Of a stretch of 64,000 nt of DNA, positions 37,841 through 43,789 are shown in pieces; position 1 is the stretch's first letter; each line of letters starts with the position of its first letter. The stretch spans positions 109,045 to 173,044 of the forward strand of contig DF237094.1 of NCBI GenBank assembly GCA_000708835.1, in the 5' to 3' direction. This stretch comes from Klebsormidium nitens (taxonomy: Eukaryota > Plantae > Klebsormidiophyceae). A program made the position numbers and the translations under genes. The notes beneath the pieces were generated by a model. That model was given only the letters and a program-made list of their open reading frames with translations, was not told where the DNA came from and ran no database searches.

Positions 37841-40800
37841 TCACGCTGACTGCAGCGTGAACGCGCGCACGTAATCGACGACGAACGCGTTCTTGTCGGG
37901 GTCCTTGAGATCCGCGACGGCGGGGAGTCCCTCCGAGCTGGACACACGCAGATCGCCACATTTTCAATAAATTCAAAGGAAGATATCAGTAAGCCAGGAT
38001 AATAATAAGCTCCGACCAACATTGAAAATCCTAACCCAAAAATGTACCTGCTCCGCACCCATACCCACCCTGACCACCAAACTAACCCTACCCGTCCCAG
38101 TGCGGTTACCTTATCTCGGCTTGTTATCTTTCTTGAGTTCAATACATTTTCAGAATGGCAAAACACGCGCGAAGTGAACTTCAGATCGATTGGTCTGTCA
38201 CTCAGGGAGGCAGTCTGCAGTGTTTACGCTCGGCTGGATCGGAGCAACCAAAACCCGGTGTCCAAGGCCACCGAAGAGCGATCGGACGGCTCAGAAGCTC
38301 TGAAAGGGGTGTTACCACCCCTTTCGACGGTGCCGGACTTCGAAGGGCCTGTCTCGAATGCGGCGGTCTACCTGAAAACCTCGGTGTCGAGGAAAAGGTA
38401 CGACTGCTCGGAGAAGGGCCCCGGGGGAGTGGTTTGCCACGCCAGCTGTCCGTCGAAGTAGAAGAGCAGCGTGTTGGCGTCCTTCCACCAGACGCCGTAC
38501 GTGTGGAAGTCGCCGGACGTGAGCGTTCCGGCCGGAAGGCGGTAGTTGTATGGGAGGGCGAAGTCCGGCGTGCTCGGGGAGATGTTGTCCGGGTACTGTG
38601 AGGTAAAAGAGAACGGAAAGAGTCGGTGACTTTCTTTTCTTTTGCTGGCGACAAAAGATTTGCGAATCAGAGCACGTTGAGTGGAGCTTACAAGGACCCA
38701 GAATTCGTTTCAATCGAAAAGGCTGCGGATCCGATCATGCCAGCGTGGCAGGTCAACCCTGAGTACCGTCGTTTCAGACTTTGATACGATTTTCAAACGG
38801 GGTAACCGGTGCTAAGCTCGCAGAGTTGAGTCTTAAGACTTTTCCGGTCAACGGAAGTCCTTTAGCGGAAGGAAAATCTGAAGCATACGACATCGGATCA
38901 GAATACATGACGTGTCTTTCGGAGACAAAGTCGTATTTTCGAGAGACAAACGAAGGGTGCCAGAATGGAAATGATAGCAAAGGGACGAGTGCCTTGAAGA
39001 CAAACGGCGGGTCGATTGGCGCGGCATATCCAACTCAACTTGCCCCAATCAAGCATCTGGCCGTCTCTTTCGTTTCCGGACACAAGCAATGGAAAGGATG
39101 TGCGCTCGGAATGCGACGAAAGAAAACGAAGCGCTGAGGGGAAGATTTGTTGCGCTACTCAGACGTAGCACGTTTCGAACTCAGTTTTCAGAAACAGTTC
39201 TACAAGAACTTCCAGGTCTTCCAATGAGGTGTTCCGATTGTCAAGGCCGTCAGCTCAGAACCTCATAGAAGGAAATCAATCCGATATTCAACGGCTTAAA
39301 GCACTCAAAAACGAGGGAGAGCCCGGCGCGCTCACGTAGTGTGTGTTGATGTTCATGTAGCGGCTGCGGTAGTTGCTCGCGACGCCCACCGTTTCGATGA
39401 CGTCAATCTCCGTCCGCTGCGACTGGAACCAGAACGATGACGTCATCTGCATGTTGGACGCCTTGAAGCGGCACTCGTAGTACCCATACCCCGCGATCGC
39501 CGCGTTGGACGAGATAACCGCGGAGCTAACCCAGGGGTCGTTGTACGGGTCGTTAACCTGGTCAACGCTGCTAACCGTGGTGGTTGACGTCAACCTGGCG
39601 ACACCCCCCCCCACGGCGACGTTCGCCGGGTCGAACTGACTGGGCAGGCGGCCCGACCAGTACGGGTGGGTCGCCCGCCACTTGCTGGTGTCAAGTTCGT
39701 CGCCGTTAAACTCGTCGGTTAGCGCCGGGTTAACGACCCAGCGATAACCCGACGGCGCGGCGGGGAGGTTGGTACCGGAGGGGATAGCCGATGCAGTTAG
39801 TGGAGGAGGAGTGGCCGGGGCAGTGGTCGGGGAAGGGGTGGCCGGCGGTTTTGTTGGAGAAGGAGTGGTTGGGGGGTCCGTCGGGGAAGAGGGTGACCGG
39901 CGGACTGGTCGGGCTAAGGGGTGGCTGGGGGGGGGGGGGTCGGGGCAGGAGTGGTCGGGAAATTGGTTGGGGAAGGAGTGGCCGGGGCATCCGTCGGGGA
40001 GGGAGCGGCCGGAGGATTGGTCGGAGAAGGTGTGGCCGGGGCAGAAGTCGGAGAAGGCGTGGCCGGGGAATCCGTTGGGGAGGGAGTGACCGGCGGGTCG
40101 GTCGAGGGAATGGTCGGAGAAGGAGTGTCTGGAGGGTTTGTTGGGGCAGGCGTGGCGGGGGCAGTAGTCGGAGAAGGAGTGACCGGGGCATCGGTCGGCG
40201 AAGGAGTGACCGGGCGAAGGGTTGGGGATGATGTGATAGAAGCGGGCGCCGCGAGCGCGGCCGCGGGGCCGCCCGCGCAGCTCGCGAACGGCGCCGCGTT
40301 GGGCCCGCACGTCCCGGGGCAACACGCCATGTTCTGGCCGTCGAGGTTGTAGCACGGGTTTGGCGCCTGGGGGGGACACGTGCCGGTCGAAGAAGAAGAA
40401 CCGGTAGGAGGAGGAGGAGACCCGCTAGCAGGAGAAGGAGACCCGGTCGGCGAAGAAACGGTCGGTGCAGGGGTGACGTCAGTGTCGCCCGCACACGTGG
40501 CGAGCGCGCCCCCGTTCGGGCCGCACCCCCCCGCGCAACACGCCATGCTCTGGCCGTTGAAGTTGTAGCACGGGTTGGGCGCGCCGGGGGGACACGTGGC
40601 GCCCGCCGGCACGGCGACCTTCCCGGCGGCCAGCTTGGGGACGGTGGCGTTGGCCACGTGGCAGGTGGCGATTGGGTCGTTGTCGGCGCCGCACGCGCTG
40701 GAGCAGCAGGTCATTTGGTCGCCGATGGCGTTGTAGCAGGTGCGGGTGTTGAGGGGGCAACGTTGGGGAGCCACGTGGGTGACGTTGTTGAAGGGGGGAA

Positions 40801-43789
40801 CTGCATGAGGGACGTATTGCGAGGTTGACTTGTTGAGAGTTTTGAAAGAAGTGGAAGCTACGGAAGTGTCGAGATAAAAGCGGGCTGAAAACTTCAACGG
40901 ATGCGTGCCGAAAGGCAAATGAATCTGGAGGAAGCTTTGAATGCATATCACGATCCACGCGCGCACTTTTAATTCGGCCGGGATCCTCGTGGCAGAAAGA
41001 ATGAGCACTCTCGCGATCCTTCCATGAAAGCAGAAAATAAAGTCGGCTATTTCCAAAACAGTGAGAGAATGCTCATGCTCAAAAGATGGGCTCATTTCCG
41101 CTTGCAACGCTGCCGCCCAGATGGGAATCCGAACACTGCGGAGTTCGAATCGAGTACGAGTTCTATTAGCGTACCTGGAAACACATCATAACTCGACAAC
41201 GTTCACCAGACATGCATTCTTGGGCCAGTTGCGGATCAAAAGCGCTCCTTTCCATGCATTCTTGGACTTTGAAAAGCGAACAGATGCTAAGACTGATTGC
41301 TTACCAACGTAGTCAACGTGACCGATGTGCCTGGCATCGATCGTCTGGTTGTCGTTCGCTGCACACGAAAGAGCGTGTCAGATAATGCTACGGCGATGAG
41401 GAGACCAAATCGGAAATCAAGCTGGTTGATTTCGAGACAAAGGATGCCGTACATTTTTACCTACTGATGAGAGAGATGAGCAGGGAAACTCCTTGGCGTG
41501 AGGAAGGCAGCGCGGAAGAAGCACGGTGAGGTCTTAGAAGACCTTGCAATGGAGACAGAGGCCTCGAACAAACAGCTTATGAACCTCGAGTCTGGATCCC
41601 CAAACACTATTCTCCTCGGGCATGATCACTGGATGAGTACTAAGTGCATGCGTTATGAAGACGCAAAGCGACACTTGGCGGAGGGAACATATTGCGAGGA
41701 ATGAAGGTAAGCTAGGGGGCATGAAGGGCGCCAGAAAGGGAGGAGGACAGAAGGAATCCGCATGGGGGATTCCTTAAGGCAGGTTTGGCAGTTACTGAAT
41801 GGTGGAATACCAGGAGCTGAGTAGGAAGTAAGGAGAGGCGTCGGAAGAAGGCAGTGGTGATGAGGCAATGGACAAGTGAAAGTAGGAGACGAACGAACGG
41901 AAACCAAAGGCGGGTTGGAAGCCAGAAGAATGAAATGGAAAAGAAAGGCAATAGACTAAGGACTGTGATAAGGCTAACACAAGGCCCTTTGCCCGATCGC
42001 CCATTGAACTTTGAGATGCAGGGGTGAAAGTTAGGGAGTAGTGGTGACTTTAGATTGTGTTCTCCCGACCCTCTCCGAAGGCCTCACCCCCCCTCTCAGC
42101 TTGTGGAAAAGCGCTCAAAGCCTGTCGACTCAAAAAGTACGAGACTAACTCAGAAGAGGGTGGGATCTGCCTTGTCCCGCACTAGAATTGAAGCCGGGGC
42201 TTGCACATGGGTCAAACATCTGAAGGCCCCCTCCCTTCCCCAGTTTAGGGCAACGCAGCCAGTCCCATGCAGCCCCCCGACTCGCTATCAAAACCCAATC
42301 CTCTGCTACGTCAAAGTGACCGTTTTATGAAAGGTTTGAAAATGGAACTTACTTTCTCCTCAGCATAGTTCCAGACAGTCACTCCATGAGACTGGCAATC
42401 AGCGCAAGCTGACTCTAAGGGGACTGCCACAAAAAGGACCCAGAATCCAGCAGACATAAAGTACCGTCTGAAGTTCTAAGCAATCCTTTGAAGCTTTTGA
42501 GTGACACATGCAGACCAGGATGATTTAGACCCTACGGATCCAATCTAAGAACTTAGGAACCAAAAGTGTTGACAAAAGGTTGGCTGCCAGCAACCGAGTC
42601 AGTGAGCGGTTTGTCTGGGACAGACATGGTTCAACAAATCACTGAAAACTGCAAGGTTTGCCTCCAAGTGTATGAAAAGGCTGAGAGGTCCTCAACCCAC
42701 CAGGAGAGATGGTGACATTGTCAAGGTACACTCTACTCGTTTTTCCAGCAGTGAAGAAGGCAACGGCCAGCGTTTCGTTATCCGCAGTCGCCACAAAGGG
42801 TCCGGTGCGCATGCGTGAGCCAGGCACCACTGCCGTGATGACAGCTGTCGCGTCTACAGCGATCGCCAAGTTGGCGGAGGCGCCTGCGCTGGCAGTCATC
42901 CGCAGCGAAAGGATGTACGTGCTGCCTGTAGCATGGATGACTTGATCTGATTTCCCGCCCAATCTAGATGTTGTTGTAATCAATCAGCAACTGGATAGAT
43001 ATTGAGGTGATTTGTACAGTCTCAACTGGTTTTATCCAGATCCTGCCTTGGTGGTACTATACTGCATCCTGTCAACTCTGCTAGGAATCTGAAAAAGGGG
43101 TTTGGCTTTTAATGTAACTGGATGTACAAGCCACAGAAGATTGATGTAAGCTAAAAGCTTCCAAGTGCAGCTAGGCATTTGTCTGCTAGGAATTACTGGT
43201 GATTCATTCTAAGAGCTGATGTTGTGCCAGATCCAATGTGGTACAATGCTGATCATGAGATTAACTTTGCATGAGAACAAGGACCTTACTACAGCGCGCT
43301 TTCACCCGGCTTTCTGAAGAAGCCCATACTCCTCTAGCTAAGAATCTGAAGGAATGCAATCCGCCCCGTGCATTGATCAGCTCAATCCAGATCAGATCTG
43401 CGCCCATTGGGTGCCACGCACAATGTCCCAGACTCTACAATGCAGCATCTGCCGCGCACCCCAACCTTCCAAGGTTCAGACTTTGATGATCTGTCTAAGC
43501 TGAACATCCTTACATTCAACCCCGTGAACTCACCTGGAATCAGCCCAGTGACATTCTGCCTCAGGATGACGCCATCCTTGTGCACAGTCACTTGCACGCC
43601 ATCTGGGGCGAGGCGCGCGGAACCTGGGGCGGGGCTTAGGCTCTTCCCGGGAAATGCTGTCCAGTTACCGGTGAGAAGAGCCACCGGGGAGCTTGTTGTA
43701 GAGCTGCCAATGACGAACTGCATTTGGATCAGCGCTAGGGTGGTGGCGAGCAAAGGCAGCAGGGGGGCTGAGCTGGGCGCCAAAGCCAT
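37841..43789 (-). CDS. Secreted modular glycoside hydrolase: signal peptide, CBM-like beta-sandwich, three 6-Cys repeats, Pro/Thr stalk, GH16 domain (beta-porphyranase/agarase type). Exons 43789-43534, 42925-42701, 40800-39336 (frameshift at G13, 39927-39939), 38595-38372, 37937-37841
   Basis: All four introns are GT-AG and in phase. GH16 motifs: W..NPALTDEFNGDELDTSKW...HPYWSGRLPSQF..NV; YGYYECRFKAS; catalytic EIDVIE (39410-39393); DFHTYGVWWKDANTLLFYFDG; DLKDPDKNAFVVDYVRAF. Signal-like MALAPSSAPLLPLLATTLALI. GLIPGSTYILSLRM..VYLDNVTI is typical of galactose-binding-like domains. Confidence 0.85.
39790..40245 (-). repeat. Coding minisatellite (xPATPSPT-type Pro/Thr repeats) forming the GH16 stalk
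   Basis: Repeated TPSPT units (plus strand ggtcggggaaggggtggccgg variants), more than 10 copies. Confidence 0.9.

What the first reader, a model, noticed from the sequence alone, without database searches (positions are those of the whole stretch)
37841..39780. Bacterial-type beta-porphyranase/agarase-like GH16 domain in a green-lineage genome
Seen: catalytic E-I-D-V-I-E (ExDxxE) with HPYWSGRLPSQF, YGYYECRFKAS, FHTYGVWWKDANT and DYVRAF motifs, in a spliced gene with a signal peptide. Known: land-plant GH16s (XTH, EG16) use ExDxE, while ExDxxE marks laminarinase/agarase/porphyranase/carrageenase branches. The W.GR.P..F and FH.YG.WW.D pattern matches my recollection of Bacteroidetes beta-porphyranases such as Zobellia PorA/PorB. 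Inference: an intron-domesticated horizontal acquisition, possibly acting on an uncharacterised galactan of the alga's own wall or mucilage rather than on red-algal porphyran.
Basis: partly seen in the sequence, partly recalled or inferred. Interest (0 to 1): 0.78.

Follow-up and report, generated by a model that had tools for sequence, protein, structure and literature searches.

The report
Bacterial-type galactanase gene in Klebsormidium
A land-dwelling green alga related to land plants carries an expressed, intron-containing gene for a secreted enzyme whose nearest relatives are bacterial enzymes that cut red-seaweed-type galactans, so the alga probably took it from bacteria and may use it on an undescribed galactan of its own wall.

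Summary
All five motifs, including the catalytic E-I-D-V-I-E, lie on the minus strand in three exons at 37841-39779.

These exons are the tail of a six-exon gene (43789-37841) of about 772 residues. In order it encodes:
- a predicted signal peptide
- a CBM-like beta-sandwich
- three orphan 6-Cys modules
- a Pro/Thr linker
- a GH16 domain

RNA contigs confirm four splice junctions. They also remove one of two frame breaks in the linker. The other break, a 13-C run, is unresolved.

The best solved relative is Zobellia beta-porphyranase A (E 6e-33 for one exon alone). The closest relatives are two tandem Klebsormidium nitens paralogues (64-67%). After those come only bacteria (44-51%: Planctomycetota, Chloroflexota, Verrucomicrobiota, Bacteroidota).

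The algal genes form one strongly supported clade inside an unresolved bacterial radiation. They share one intron position, are under purifying selection (dN/dS 0.19) and carry the host's TGACGTCA signature.

Some bacterial homologues sit next to a sulfatase, GH29 or GH2 gene. These are the enzyme families of the porphyran exo-cycle.

Horizontal acquisition is well supported. The substrate is inferred only. The scan had already noted the tandem paralogues on another piece (s1-332576).

The parts
43534..43789 (-). Exon 1: ATG at 43789-43787, predicted signal peptide (about 28 aa, hydrophobic core, cleavage region ...VIG/SS), and the first half of a CBM-like beta-sandwich domain
   Evidence: Sequence read. 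tblastn of paralogue P0002 residues 21-94 hits here. The RNA junction 43534/42925 is confirmed. The signal peptide is inferred from the sequence and from the aligned ...G/SS site of P0002; no predictor was run.
42701..42925 (-). Exon 2: second half of the N-terminal CBM-like beta-sandwich domain
   Evidence: tblastn of P0002 residues 85-157 and alignment A3. The AF2 model of the paralogue's domain (pLDDT 70) has as best PDB fold match 8XMZ, a porphyran-binding CBM (E 3.6e-7, TM 0.60), then CBM16/4/22/61. The Atlas feature search gives CBM_4_9 at 0.95. The 5' junction is confirmed by RNA. The 3' donor at 42700 is inferred.
41305..41358 (-). Exon 3: 54-nt mini-exon (18 codons, phase 1 to phase 1)
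   Evidence: The junction 41305/40800 is seen in an RNA contig of run X8. The 5' end at 41358 is inferred: it follows the only AG that keeps the frame, downstream of an in-frame stop at 41380-41378. The contig runs 7 nt beyond it.
39336..40800 (-). Exon 4: three Cys-rich modules, the Pro/Thr linker and the first 148 aa of the GH16 domain
   Evidence: Both ends are confirmed by RNA junctions 40800/41305 and 39336/38595. The orthologous ORF P0012 in L001 runs uninterrupted from the Cys modules through the linker into GH16.
40277..40759 (-). Three about 34-aa modules with six Cys each (C-x8-C-x9-CC-x3-C-x9/10-C) at 40759-40661, 40594-40493 and 40378-40277; presumed small binding modules of unknown fold
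   Evidence: Alignment A4 with the modules of P0001, P0002 and P0012 has 9 invariant columns. There is no Pfam hit. The only hit in the word search is P0012. The AF2 model is poor (pLDDT 65).
39780..40276 (-). Pro/Thr-rich linker (TPSPT-type repeats) with two frame breaks in the window sequence: an extra base at 39891 and a 13-base C run (G on the + strand) at 39927-39939
   Evidence: Three reading frames each carry part of the repeat. RNA contigs of three runs leave out one base at 39891, which restores the frame there (table 4). No contig crosses the homopolymer. A run of 12 would give one open frame of 772 codons (own reading).
39336..39779 (-). GH16 catalytic domain, part 1 (148 aa): N-terminal strand/helix element, W-x-x-R motif, Trp platform, catalytic E-I-D-V-I-E, N-T-H
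   Evidence: phmmer against PorA 4ATE gives E 5.9e-33, 4AWD 3e-25, PorB 2.9e-14.
39393..39410 (-). Codons of E-I-D-V-I-E: predicted nucleophile Glu (39410-39408), Asp (39404-39402) and acid/base Glu (39395-39393)
   Evidence: They align with E145/D147/E150 of 8EP4 and with the E-I-D-V-I-E of PorA. 8EP4 is taken to be BpGH16C because its chain numbering fits the N61/W64/R67 of PMC12316285 (own inference). The roles come from GH16 literature (PMC6827312, PMC12316285).
39648..39659 (-). Codons of W-S-G-R, the Trp/Arg pair of the negative subsites
   Evidence: They align with W64/R67 of 8EP4. In BpGH16C, Arg67 with Glu238 binds O4 of the -1 galactose and Trp64 stacks on the -2 sugar (PMC12316285). 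Arg-70/Trp-67 of PorB are described as characteristic (PMC6827312).
38372..38595 (-). Exon 5: GH16 domain, part 2 (FHTYGVWWKD..., FLDTEVF)
   Evidence: phmmer against PorA gives E 2.7e-10. Pfam PF00722 scores 18.5 bits, below the cut-off of 22. Both junctions are confirmed by RNA.
37841..37937 (-). Exon 6: GH16 domain, part 3 (GLP...DYVRAF) and the TGA stop at 37843-37841
   Evidence: Translation, alignment, junction 37937/38372 in two RNA runs.
38596..39335 (-). Phase-0 intron between N-T-H-Y and Y-P, at the same position in all algal copies
   Evidence: The same position and phase are found in P0001 and P0002 (L002) and in the L001 copy. The intron is spliced in RNA.
37938..38371 (-). Last intron, specific to this copy; it holds a high-copy repeat at about 38025-38115
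   Evidence: Spliced in RNA. It is absent from P0001, P0002 and L001, where this stretch is one exon. DNA word depth is about 3550 in the bin 38030-38229, against 10-20 in most other bins.

Best explanation
This is a nuclear, expressed, six-exon gene of Klebsormidium (nitens or a very close strain). It encodes a secreted modular glycoside hydrolase of about 772 aa. The parts, in order, are a signal peptide, a CBM-like beta-sandwich, three 6-Cys modules, a Pro/Thr linker and a C-terminal GH16 catalytic domain. The catalytic domain belongs to the galactanase branch, closest to Zobellia beta-porphyranase A. It descends from a bacterial GH16 taken up by an ancestor of Klebsormidium-like algae. After uptake the gene gained introns, duplicated into at least three copies, acquired alga-specific Cys modules and linkers, and took on the host's sequence signature. 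It most likely works as a retaining endo-beta-galactanase. The CBM-like and Cys modules would hold the enzyme on a wall or mucilage polymer. The first Glu of E-I-D-V-I-E attacks the anomeric carbon of a beta-D-galactose in subsite -1. That galactose is held by the Trp platform and by the Arg/Glu pair that reads its axial O4. The last Glu acts as acid/base. Shown here: gene structure, expression and splicing, family placement, intact catalytic and -1 subsite residues, purifying selection, and a restricted eukaryotic distribution. Inferred: secretion, binding by the accessory modules, galactan as substrate, and the substrate being a D/L-galactan (porphyran-like, possibly sulfated) made by the alga itself.
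For: Gene model and expression:
- Four GT..AG junctions appear in RNA contigs of three runs, and one frame break is removed by RNA.

Family placement:
- PorA is the best solved relative for each exon and for the paralogue's whole domain.
- All three exon pieces tile the domain at 64-67% identity to the K. nitens paralogues and 44-51% to bacterial proteins.

Active site:
- E/D/E, W41, R44, W117 and Ser115 align with E145/D147/E150, W64, R67, W134 and the Ser/Gly position of solved porphyranases (PMC12316285).

Horizontal transfer:
- The algal sequences form one clade (100/99) inside a radiation whose other 60 ingroup rows are bacterial or from unnamed metagenome contigs; every named one is bacterial.
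- All named non-Klebsormidium hits in three searches are bacterial.
- Neighbours of P0003 and of the GTDB loci are bacterial operon genes.

Long residence in the alga:
- A shared phase-0 intron.
- dN/dS 0.19 and dS 0.74 against the L001 copy.
- Five TGACGTCA sites inside the gene, against a genome-wide excess shared with a K. nitens scaffold.

Substrate lead:
- Bacterial homologues lie next to a sulfatase (L004), GH29 plus GH2 (L008), GH29 (L015) and GH97 (L006). Sulfatase, GH29 alpha-L-galactosidase and GH2 beta-galactosidase form the porphyran exo-cycle in PMC12316285.
- The N-terminal domain's best fold match is a porphyran-binding CBM.
- Klebsormidium 'pectin' is Gal-rich and lacks uronic acids. 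Chlorokybus 'pectin' holds mostly L-Gal plus sulphate (PMC10953000).
Against: - No activity has been measured for this clade or for its nearest bacterial relatives. PorA is only about 44% identical.
- The tree backbone is unresolved, so neither the donor nor a firm nesting inside one bacterial subclade is shown. The weak sister is Verrucomicrobia subdivision 3 (90/48).
- The 13-C homopolymer still breaks the frame in the window, and no contig crosses it.
- The residues of the sulfate pocket are not established (His, as in PorA, where BpGH16C has Asn61; Gln where it has Ser136).
- The CBM fold match is not specific: CBM16/4/22/61 score within two orders of magnitude, the model's pLDDT is 70, and it was built from the paralogue.
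- Sulfated or L-Gal polymers have not been reported for Klebsormidium in the papers read.
Confidence: 0.68

Rival explanations
1. Same enzyme, but aimed outward. It would digest galactans or exopolysaccharides of neighbours in soil crusts and biofilms (other algae, cyanobacteria, bacteria) for carbon, space or defence, rather than remodelling the alga's own wall.
For: The enzyme is secreted and carries CBM-like modules, the typical build of bacterial degradative enzymes. The red alga Chondrus makes a porphyranase against a polymer it is not known to contain (PMC9771727). No matching polymer is documented in Klebsormidium.
Against: K. nitens is a photoautotroph. Three paralogues have been kept under purifying selection, and transcripts appear in runs labelled as this organism, which fits a housekeeping wall role at least as well. 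Klebsormidium has a Gal-rich, uronic-acid-free matrix fraction of unknown structure (PMC10953000).
Confidence: 0.2
2. The copy in this window is a decaying pseudogene. The two frame breaks in the linker would be real, and only the tandem paralogues on the other scaffold would be functional.
For: Two frame shifts lie within 50 bases in the window sequence. No protein of 191-695 aa from this locus is in the protein collection.
Against: RNA contigs from three runs lack the extra base at 39891. The other break lies in a 13-base homopolymer, a classic assembly-error site, which no DNA or RNA contig crosses. Transcripts are correctly spliced on both sides of the breaks. dN/dS against the L001 copy is 0.19, and all catalytic residues are intact.
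Confidence: 0.08
3. The substrate is not a galactan but a beta-glucan, for example callose or laminarin-type beta-1,3-glucan, which is abundant in Klebsormidium walls. Many ExDxxE GH16 enzymes act on such glucans.
For: The ExDxxE motif is shared with laminarinases (PMC6827312). Callose is prominent in Klebsormidium walls. JGI annotators label many relatives 'beta-glucanase (GH16 family)'.
Against: No laminarinase matched exon 4 even at E up to 10; laminarinase-type glucanases appear only as marginal matches to exon 5 (E 0.07-0.7). Every strong match is a porphyranase, agarase or carrageenase. The Arg and Glu that bind the axial O4 of galactose in BpGH16C are conserved (PMC12316285). Bacterial neighbours are sulfatase, GH29 and GH2 rather than beta-glucosidases. 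The JGI label is generic.
Confidence: 0.08
4. Vertical inheritance of an ancient eukaryotic GH16 that was lost in all other sampled eukaryotes, or a transfer from alga to bacteria.
For: The algal clade has a long stem (0.44) and is not robustly nested within one bacterial subclade.
Against: Hundreds of diverse bacterial members from at least six phyla surround it. No other eukaryote appears among the named hits. Red algal GH16 group with subfamilies 13/14 instead (PMC9771727). Vertical descent would need many independent losses.
Confidence: 0.04

Closest known systems
Zobellia galactanivorans beta-porphyranase A (PorA; PDB 3ILF, 4ATE), a small GH16 group left unclassified in the 2019 subfamily roadmap
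   Same: Best solved relative of every exon and of the paralogue's full domain (E 5.9e-33, 2.7e-10, 1.1e-49). Shared features are E-I-D-V-I-E, H-P-aromatic-W-x-G-R, M-T-S-S-F-W, N-T-H-Y, F-D-T-E-V-F and the Ser at the position that excludes 6-O-methyl-Gal (PMC12316285).
   Different: Only about 44% identical (measured through the PorA-like domain of P0028). The algal proteins lack PorA's insertion before G-L-P and have their own loop after N-T-H-Y-Y-P. PorA is a single-domain marine bacterial enzyme. This protein is eukaryotic, intron-bearing and carries extra modules. Its activity is unknown.
Uncharacterised bacterial GH16 clade (Tepidisphaerales, Phycisphaerae, Pirellulales, Chloroflexales/Anaerolineales, Verrucomicrobiota, Armatimonadota, Bacteroidota, one cyanobacterium)
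   Same: The nearest non-algal relatives, 44-51% identical over the whole domain. Some carry an N-terminal CBM_4_9 before the GH16, the same order as here. Some sit beside sulfatase, GH29 or GH2 genes.
   Different: They have no introns, no Cys modules and no Pro/Thr linker. Most have F-x-W-x-G-L-P where the algal proteins have no Trp. None has been characterised.
GH16_12 and GH16_11 beta-porphyranases (Bacteroides plebeius BpGH16B 4AWD; Zobellia PorB 3JUU)
   Same: Second and third best solved relatives (E 3e-25 and 2.9e-14 for exon 4). They share the N-terminal element and the W-x-x-R motif (PMC6827312).
   Different: They form a separate, strongly supported clade in the tree (100/100). They have long insertions around the catalytic strand.
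Chondrus crispus CcGH16-3, a red-algal beta-porphyranase (PMC9771727)
   Same: A eukaryotic alga with a GH16 of the marine-galactanase branch, close to bacterial enzymes and predicted to enter the secretory pathway. It sets the precedent for an alga-encoded porphyranase.
   Different: According to that paper, red-algal GH16 group with subfamilies 13/14, not with PorA. The host is a marine red alga with sulfated galactan walls, whereas this host is a terrestrial/freshwater streptophyte. I did not compare the sequences directly.
EG16-2 / XTH lineage (GH16_20) of streptophytes, proposed to derive from alphaproteobacterial ExoK by transfer near the Klebsormidium divergence (PMC8711696)
   Same: Another GH16 in the same genome with a proposed bacterial origin and a wall-remodelling role.
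   Different: It belongs to the ExDxE branch without the beta-bulge, acts on xyloglucan or glucans, and sits in a different part of the family. The gene here would be a second, independent GH16 acquisition.

Membership tests
Glycoside hydrolase family 16 (CAZy GH16) | Sequence homology to GH16 catalytic modules across the whole beta-jelly-roll domain | tested here: met
   The three exon pieces tile the domain in alignment A1. PDB GH16 chains are hit at E 5.9e-33 and 2.7e-10. Pfam PF00722 is found only below its cut-off on exon 5 (18.5 against 22 bits) because the domain was searched in pieces. The paralogues P0001 and P0002 carry PF00722.
Glycoside hydrolase family 16 (CAZy GH16) | Catalytic Glu-x-Asp-x(-x)-Glu on one strand | tested here: met
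   E-I-D-V-I-E at 39410-39393 aligns with the catalytic motif of PorA and with E145/D147/E150 of 8EP4.
GH16 beta-bulge branch (ExDxxE: laminarinase, agarase, porphyranase, carrageenase) as opposed to the XTH/EG16/lichenase ExDxE branch | An extra residue between Asp and the second Glu | tested here: met
   The motif read directly has the extra residue. The distinction is described in PMC6827312.
GH16 galactanase group (GH16_11, _12, PorA group, agarases) | N-terminal short strand plus helix element, and a Trp (with Arg in porphyranases) in the first loop lining the negative subsites | tested here: met
   The alignment starts at residue 4-13 of the domain and covers the N-terminal element of PorA, 4AWD and PorB. 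W41/R44 align with W64/R67 of 8EP4. The feature is described in PMC6827312. This is a sequence alignment only; no structure of this protein was modelled.
PorA group (unclassified sister of GH16_11/12) | Clustering with PorA at the roadmap's network threshold (E 1e-55) or in a supported clade | tested here: not met
   The paralogue's whole domain against PorA gives E 1.1e-49 in a different database. In the careful tree the algal clade does not join the PorA clade and the backbone is unresolved. It is best treated as its own lineage next to PorA, not as a member of the PorA group.
Beta-porphyranase (EC 3.2.1.178) | Hydrolysis of the beta-1,4 bond between D-Gal and L-Gal-6-sulfate in porphyran | not testable with these tools
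   This needs enzyme assays. Indirect leads only: conserved -1 subsite residues and the sulfatase/GH29/GH2 neighbours of bacterial homologues.
Beta-porphyranase (EC 3.2.1.178) | Pocket that accepts the 6-sulfate of the -2 L-galactose | tested here: inconclusive
   The position of BpGH16C Asn61 is His, as in PorA. The position of Ser136 is Gln. The third residue (Asn234) could not be aligned from exon 5 (PMC12316285).
Horizontally acquired bacterial gene resident in a eukaryotic nucleus | Spliceosomal introns and spliced transcripts | tested here: met
   Four GT..AG junctions in RNA contigs. One intron position is shared by four algal copies.
Horizontally acquired bacterial gene resident in a eukaryotic nucleus | Nearest relatives bacterial, with no relatives in sister eukaryotic lineages | tested here: met
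   Named hits other than Klebsormidium are all bacterial. The only eukaryote-type hits are Klebsormidium-like fragments. Limits: most hits are unnamed metagenome proteins, and only the best 120-150 were listed.
Horizontally acquired bacterial gene resident in a eukaryotic nucleus | Robust nesting inside a defined donor clade | tested here: inconclusive
   The algal clade is at 100/99, but its sister (Verrucomicrobia subdivision 3) is only at 90/48 and the backbone is a polytomy.
CBM_4_9-type carbohydrate-binding module (N-terminal domain) | Match to the family profile, or a clearly matching fold | tested here: inconclusive
   No Pfam hit for the window pieces or for P0002:21-160. No BLASTP similarity to the CBM_4_9 of bacterial P0032. 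The fold of the paralogue's domain matches beta-sandwich CBMs in general, with 8XMZ best at TM 0.60. Atlas features give CBM_4_9 at 0.95.

The most novel reading that the evidence does not exclude
Klebsormidium, an early-branching land-dwelling relative of plants, builds an agar/porphyran-like D/L-galactan (possibly sulfated) into its wall or mucilage. It remodels that polymer with a small family of PorA-type GH16 enzymes captured from bacteria. This would be a second, independent GH16 transfer that shaped streptophyte walls, alongside the ExoK-to-EG16/XTH transfer. It would link the L-Gal/sulphate 'pseudo-pectin' of Chlorokybus to a dedicated enzyme set.
Probability: 0.25. Interest if true: 0.75.

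Novelty: new member of a known kind. Interest (0 to 1): 0.5.

Why it matters
GH16 is the family that gave land plants XTH, and that origin has been traced to a bacterial transfer near the Klebsormidium divergence. This finding adds a second bacterial GH16 lineage, from the galactanase branch otherwise known from marine bacteria and red algae, living as a small expressed gene family in the same alga.

It also gives a concrete handle on the poorly known, galactose-rich, uronic-acid-free matrix of Klebsormidium. Expressing one domain and testing it on wall fractions would show whether early streptophytes have an agar-like D/L-galactan.

The work also points to a large uncharacterised bacterial clade of PorA-like enzymes in Planctomycetota, Chloroflexota and Verrucomicrobiota, whose natural substrate is unknown.

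The paralogues are in GenBank only under a generic lectin/glucanase name. The one paper I found that searched K. nitens with porphyranase queries (10.1101/835561) counts 'other GH16' without discussing them.

Tried and rejected
- **Pfam on exon pieces.** Exon 4 gave no GH16 hit and exon 5 only a sub-threshold one. I read this as an effect of splitting the domain, not as evidence against GH16.
- **A short intron bridging the two frame breaks.** Considered and rejected: there is no GT..AG pair in the roughly 60 bases between them. One break is an indel relative to RNA.
- **The search for related loci with alignment A1.** This failed because the exon fragments broke column conservation. I repeated it with A2.
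- **Exact look-ups of two intronless window ORFs, to name the assembly.** Nothing found.
- **blastn of the window against the K. nitens scaffold L002.** It found only the GH16 paralogues and no shared repeats. I linked the window to the species through the TGACGTCA excess instead.
- **BLASTP of the paralogue's N-terminal domain against a bacterial CBM_4_9.** No similarity, so co-transfer of the CBM with the GH16 is not supported by sequence.
- **Cys-rich module.** No Pfam hit and no homologues beyond the L001 copy, and the AF2 model is too weak (pLDDT 65, pTM 0.35) to search with.
- **Contamination by bacterial DNA.** Rejected on introns, spliced RNA and the host palindrome signature.
- **FastTree placement of the algal clade outside everything else (support 83).** The careful tree did not uphold it.
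Full report
**What is at the stated place.** The feature is on the minus strand. Translation of 39779-39336, 38595-38374 and 37936-37841 gives 148, 74 and 31 residues plus a stop. Each piece was searched separately and by reference. I never joined them.

**The gene is much larger than the stated span.** tblastn with the two closest database proteins showed further matching exons upstream. Reading the sequence gives this six-exon model:

| Exon | Coordinates | Content |
|---|---|---|
| 1 | 43789-43534 | ATG, signal-peptide-like N-terminus, first half of a beta-sandwich domain |
| 2 | 42925-42701 | second half of that domain |
| 3 | 41358-41305 | 18-codon mini-exon |
| 4 | 40800-39336 | three 6-Cys modules, Pro/Thr linker, first 148 aa of GH16 |
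| 5 | 38595-38372 | GH16, part 2 |
| 6 | 37937-37841 | GH16, part 3, and stop |

**RNA evidence.** Contigs of three runs labelled as the same organism show the junctions 43534/42925, 41305/40800, 39336/38595 and 38372/37937, all GT..AG on the minus strand. So the gene is transcribed and spliced. The exon 2 to exon 3 junction and the 5' end of exon 3 are inferred only.

**Frame breaks.** In the window the Pro/Thr repeat passes through all three frames within about 50 bases.
- RNA contigs of three runs omit one base at 39891, which repairs one shift (table 4).
- The other shift lies in a 13-base homopolymer (39927-39939) that no DNA or RNA contig crosses. Twelve bases would give one frame of 772 codons.
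- The related ORF P0012 on metagenome contig L001 reads from the Cys modules through the linker into GH16 without interruption.

I therefore take both breaks as probable assembly errors, but the second is not proven. No protein of 191-695 aa from this locus is in the protein collection, so the locus may be unannotated or mis-modelled.

**Family placement.**
- Against all solved structures, exon 4 matches Zobellia porphyranase A at E 5.9e-33, B. plebeius porphyranase 4AWD at 3e-25 and PorB at 2.9e-14. Agarases and carrageenases follow much more weakly.
- Exon 5 gives the same order at its top.
- No XTH or EG16 chain matched. Laminarinase-type beta-glucanases appeared only as marginal matches to exon 5 (E 0.07-0.7).
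- The paralogue's whole domain matches PorA at 1.1e-49 over its full length.
- The alignment to 8EP4, whose numbering fits BpGH16C of PMC12316285, maps these residues onto the window protein: His for Asn61, Trp for Trp64, Arg for Arg67, Trp for Trp134, and E-I-D-V-I-E for Glu145/Asp147/Glu150. Ser stands at the position where 6-O-methyl-tolerant enzymes have Gly.
- In that paper Arg67 with Glu238 binds O4 of the -1 galactose. The corresponding D-T-E of exon 5 is conserved.
- The catalytic machinery and the galactose-reading -1 subsite are therefore intact. The sulfate pocket cannot be judged.

**Relatives.**
- The word search found two K. nitens proteins, GAQ84215 and GAQ84214. They are adjacent on scaffold DF237129.1 and 64-67% identical to the window protein.
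- It also found a closer copy, about 84% identical, on a metagenome contig of a Klebsormidium-like alga (L001).
- After those it found only bacterial or metagenomic proteins at 44-55%.
- The exhaustive search with the paralogue's domain gave 1046 hits. The named ones are Aquimarina, Fibrobacterota and Tepidisphaerales. The only eukaryote-type hits are short Klebsormidium-like fragments.
- A scan of one genome per prokaryotic species gave 15 loci: Chloroflexales, seven Planctomycetota, two Verrucomicrobiota, Armatimonadota, three Bacteroidota and one unplaced bacterium.
- A profile search listed 120 best hits. Every name other than K. nitens is bacterial, including Anaerolineales, Abitibacteriaceae and the cyanobacterium Mastigocoleus.

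**Tree.** FastTree on 172 domains and a careful IQ-TREE run on 69 both put the window exon and the two paralogues in one clade (98; 100/99). In the careful tree that clade lies inside the ingroup, which also holds the PorA clade, GH16_11/12 and many uncharacterised bacterial clades. Its stem length is 0.44. Its sister, a Verrucomicrobia subdivision 3 MAG, is weakly supported (90/48), and the backbone is a polytomy. Bacterial origin is the economical reading. The donor is not identified.

**Signs of long residence in the alga.**
- All four algal copies share a phase-0 intron between N-T-H-Y and Y-P. Other introns differ between copies.
- Over 206 codons against the L001 copy, dS is 0.74 and dN/dS is 0.19.
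- TGACGTCA occurs 19 times in the window (1.07 expected) and 7 times on the K. nitens scaffold L002 (0.33 expected).
- Five of those sites lie in this gene, one across the codons of I-D-V-I in the catalytic motif and one across the stop codon.
- This ties the window to the Klebsormidium genome, as earlier notes of the scan state, and shows amelioration of the acquired gene.

**Accessory modules.**
- The N-terminal domain has no Pfam match.
- A model of the paralogue's domain (pLDDT 70) is an all-beta sandwich. Its best PDB match is a porphyran-binding CBM (8XMZ, E 3.6e-7, TM 0.60), followed closely by CBM16, CBM4, CBM22 and CBM61.
- Language-model features point to CBM_4_9.
- Bacterial relatives P0032 and P0137 carry a true CBM_4_9 in front of their GH16, and P0127 carries one inserted in it.
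- No sequence similarity links these bacterial modules to the algal domain.
- The 6-Cys modules are found only in these algal GH16 proteins and could not be modelled well.

**Substrate.** Nothing here measures activity, but three leads point to a D/L-galactan.
- Bacterial homologues lie directly beside a sulfatase (L004), a GH29 and a GH2 (L008), a GH29 (L015) and a GH97 (L006). Sulfatase, GH29 alpha-L-galactosidase and GH2 beta-galactosidase are the exo-cycle that finishes porphyran oligosaccharides in B. plebeius (PMC12316285).
- The active-site residues are conserved, as described above.
- Klebsormidium 'pectin' lacks uronic acids and is rich in Gal. Chlorokybus 'pectin' contains mostly L-Gal plus sulphate esters (PMC10953000).

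Whether the target is the alga's own polymer or a neighbour's is open.

**Comparison with the literature.**
- The GH16 roadmap left PorA in a small unclassified group and describes GH16_11/12 as almost exclusively Bacteroidetes (PMC6827312).
- Red algae encode GH16 enzymes near subfamilies 13/14, one of which is a proven porphyranase (PMC9771727).
- The Penium genome paper searched K. nitens with porphyranase queries and counted 12 GH16, but discusses only EG16-2 (10.1101/835561).
- The XTH-origin paper treats only the ExDxE lineage (PMC8711696).
- I found no paper that describes these Klebsormidium genes.

**Verdict.**
- The enzyme is a new, eukaryotic, modular member of a known enzyme kind.
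- The scan had already noted the tandem paralogues on another piece (s1-332576).

Noticed in passing
window 38025-38115 (inside the last intron): A short high-copy repeat. DNA word depth is about 3550 in the bin 38030-38229, against 10-20 in most other bins. Many contigs end or diverge here, and variants are seen at 38072 and 38080.
   Followed up: no
window 37836, 39398, 39438, 39585, 40474: Five copies of the palindrome TGACGTCA lie inside this one gene. The window holds 19 copies against 1.07 expected. One copy spans the codons of I-D-V-I of the catalytic motif, one spans M-T-S-S and one overlaps the stop codon. Three TGACGTCA sites also lie inside the GH16 exons of paralogue P0001 in L002 (10563, 11073, 11113).
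   Followed up: partly
window 39822-39973: RNA and DNA contigs at high depth (150-250 in RNA) match this part of the Pro/Thr linker only partly and then run on unlike it. They probably come from other, strongly expressed genes with similar linker repeats.
   Followed up: no
L001:6690-10678 (JGI metagenome 3300060285, contig Ga0590115_0002306): A Klebsormidium-like alga in a metagenome carries a copy about 84% identical in protein. It has the shared N-T-H-Y|Y intron, an extra intron after P-A-N-V-Q, and no intron before G-L-P, so introns were gained or lost between close relatives.
   Followed up: partly
P0028 and P0029 (metagenome proteins, 847 and 722 aa): These are Bacteroidota-like proteins (P0028's C-terminus looks like a secretion-sorting tail) with two GH16 domains in tandem. 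The first is very close to PorA. The second belongs to the uncharacterised clade nearer to the algal enzymes.
   Followed up: no
P0127, P0137, P0105 (metagenome proteins): These bacterial GH16 proteins have a CBM_4_9-like module inserted inside the catalytic domain, between the first strands and the Y-Y-E-A-R strand (Pfam-confirmed for P0127 only; P0137's confirmed CBM_4_9 is the N-terminal one). P0127 ends D-T-E-V-F-S-Q-Y-G, like the K. nitens paralogues.
   Followed up: no
window 40277-40759; P0001:10-50; P0002:155-195; P0012: A 6-Cys module of about 34 aa (C-x8-C-x9-CC-x3-C-x9/10-C, with conserved N-P-C-aromatic-N-x-x-G-Q). It has no Pfam family, and I saw it only in front of these algal GH16 domains.
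   Followed up: partly
window 39891 and 39927-39939: Two single-base frame breaks in the window's sequence, both in runs of one base. The first is contradicted by RNA contigs. They look like assembly errors and may explain why no protein from this locus is in the collection.
   Followed up: partly
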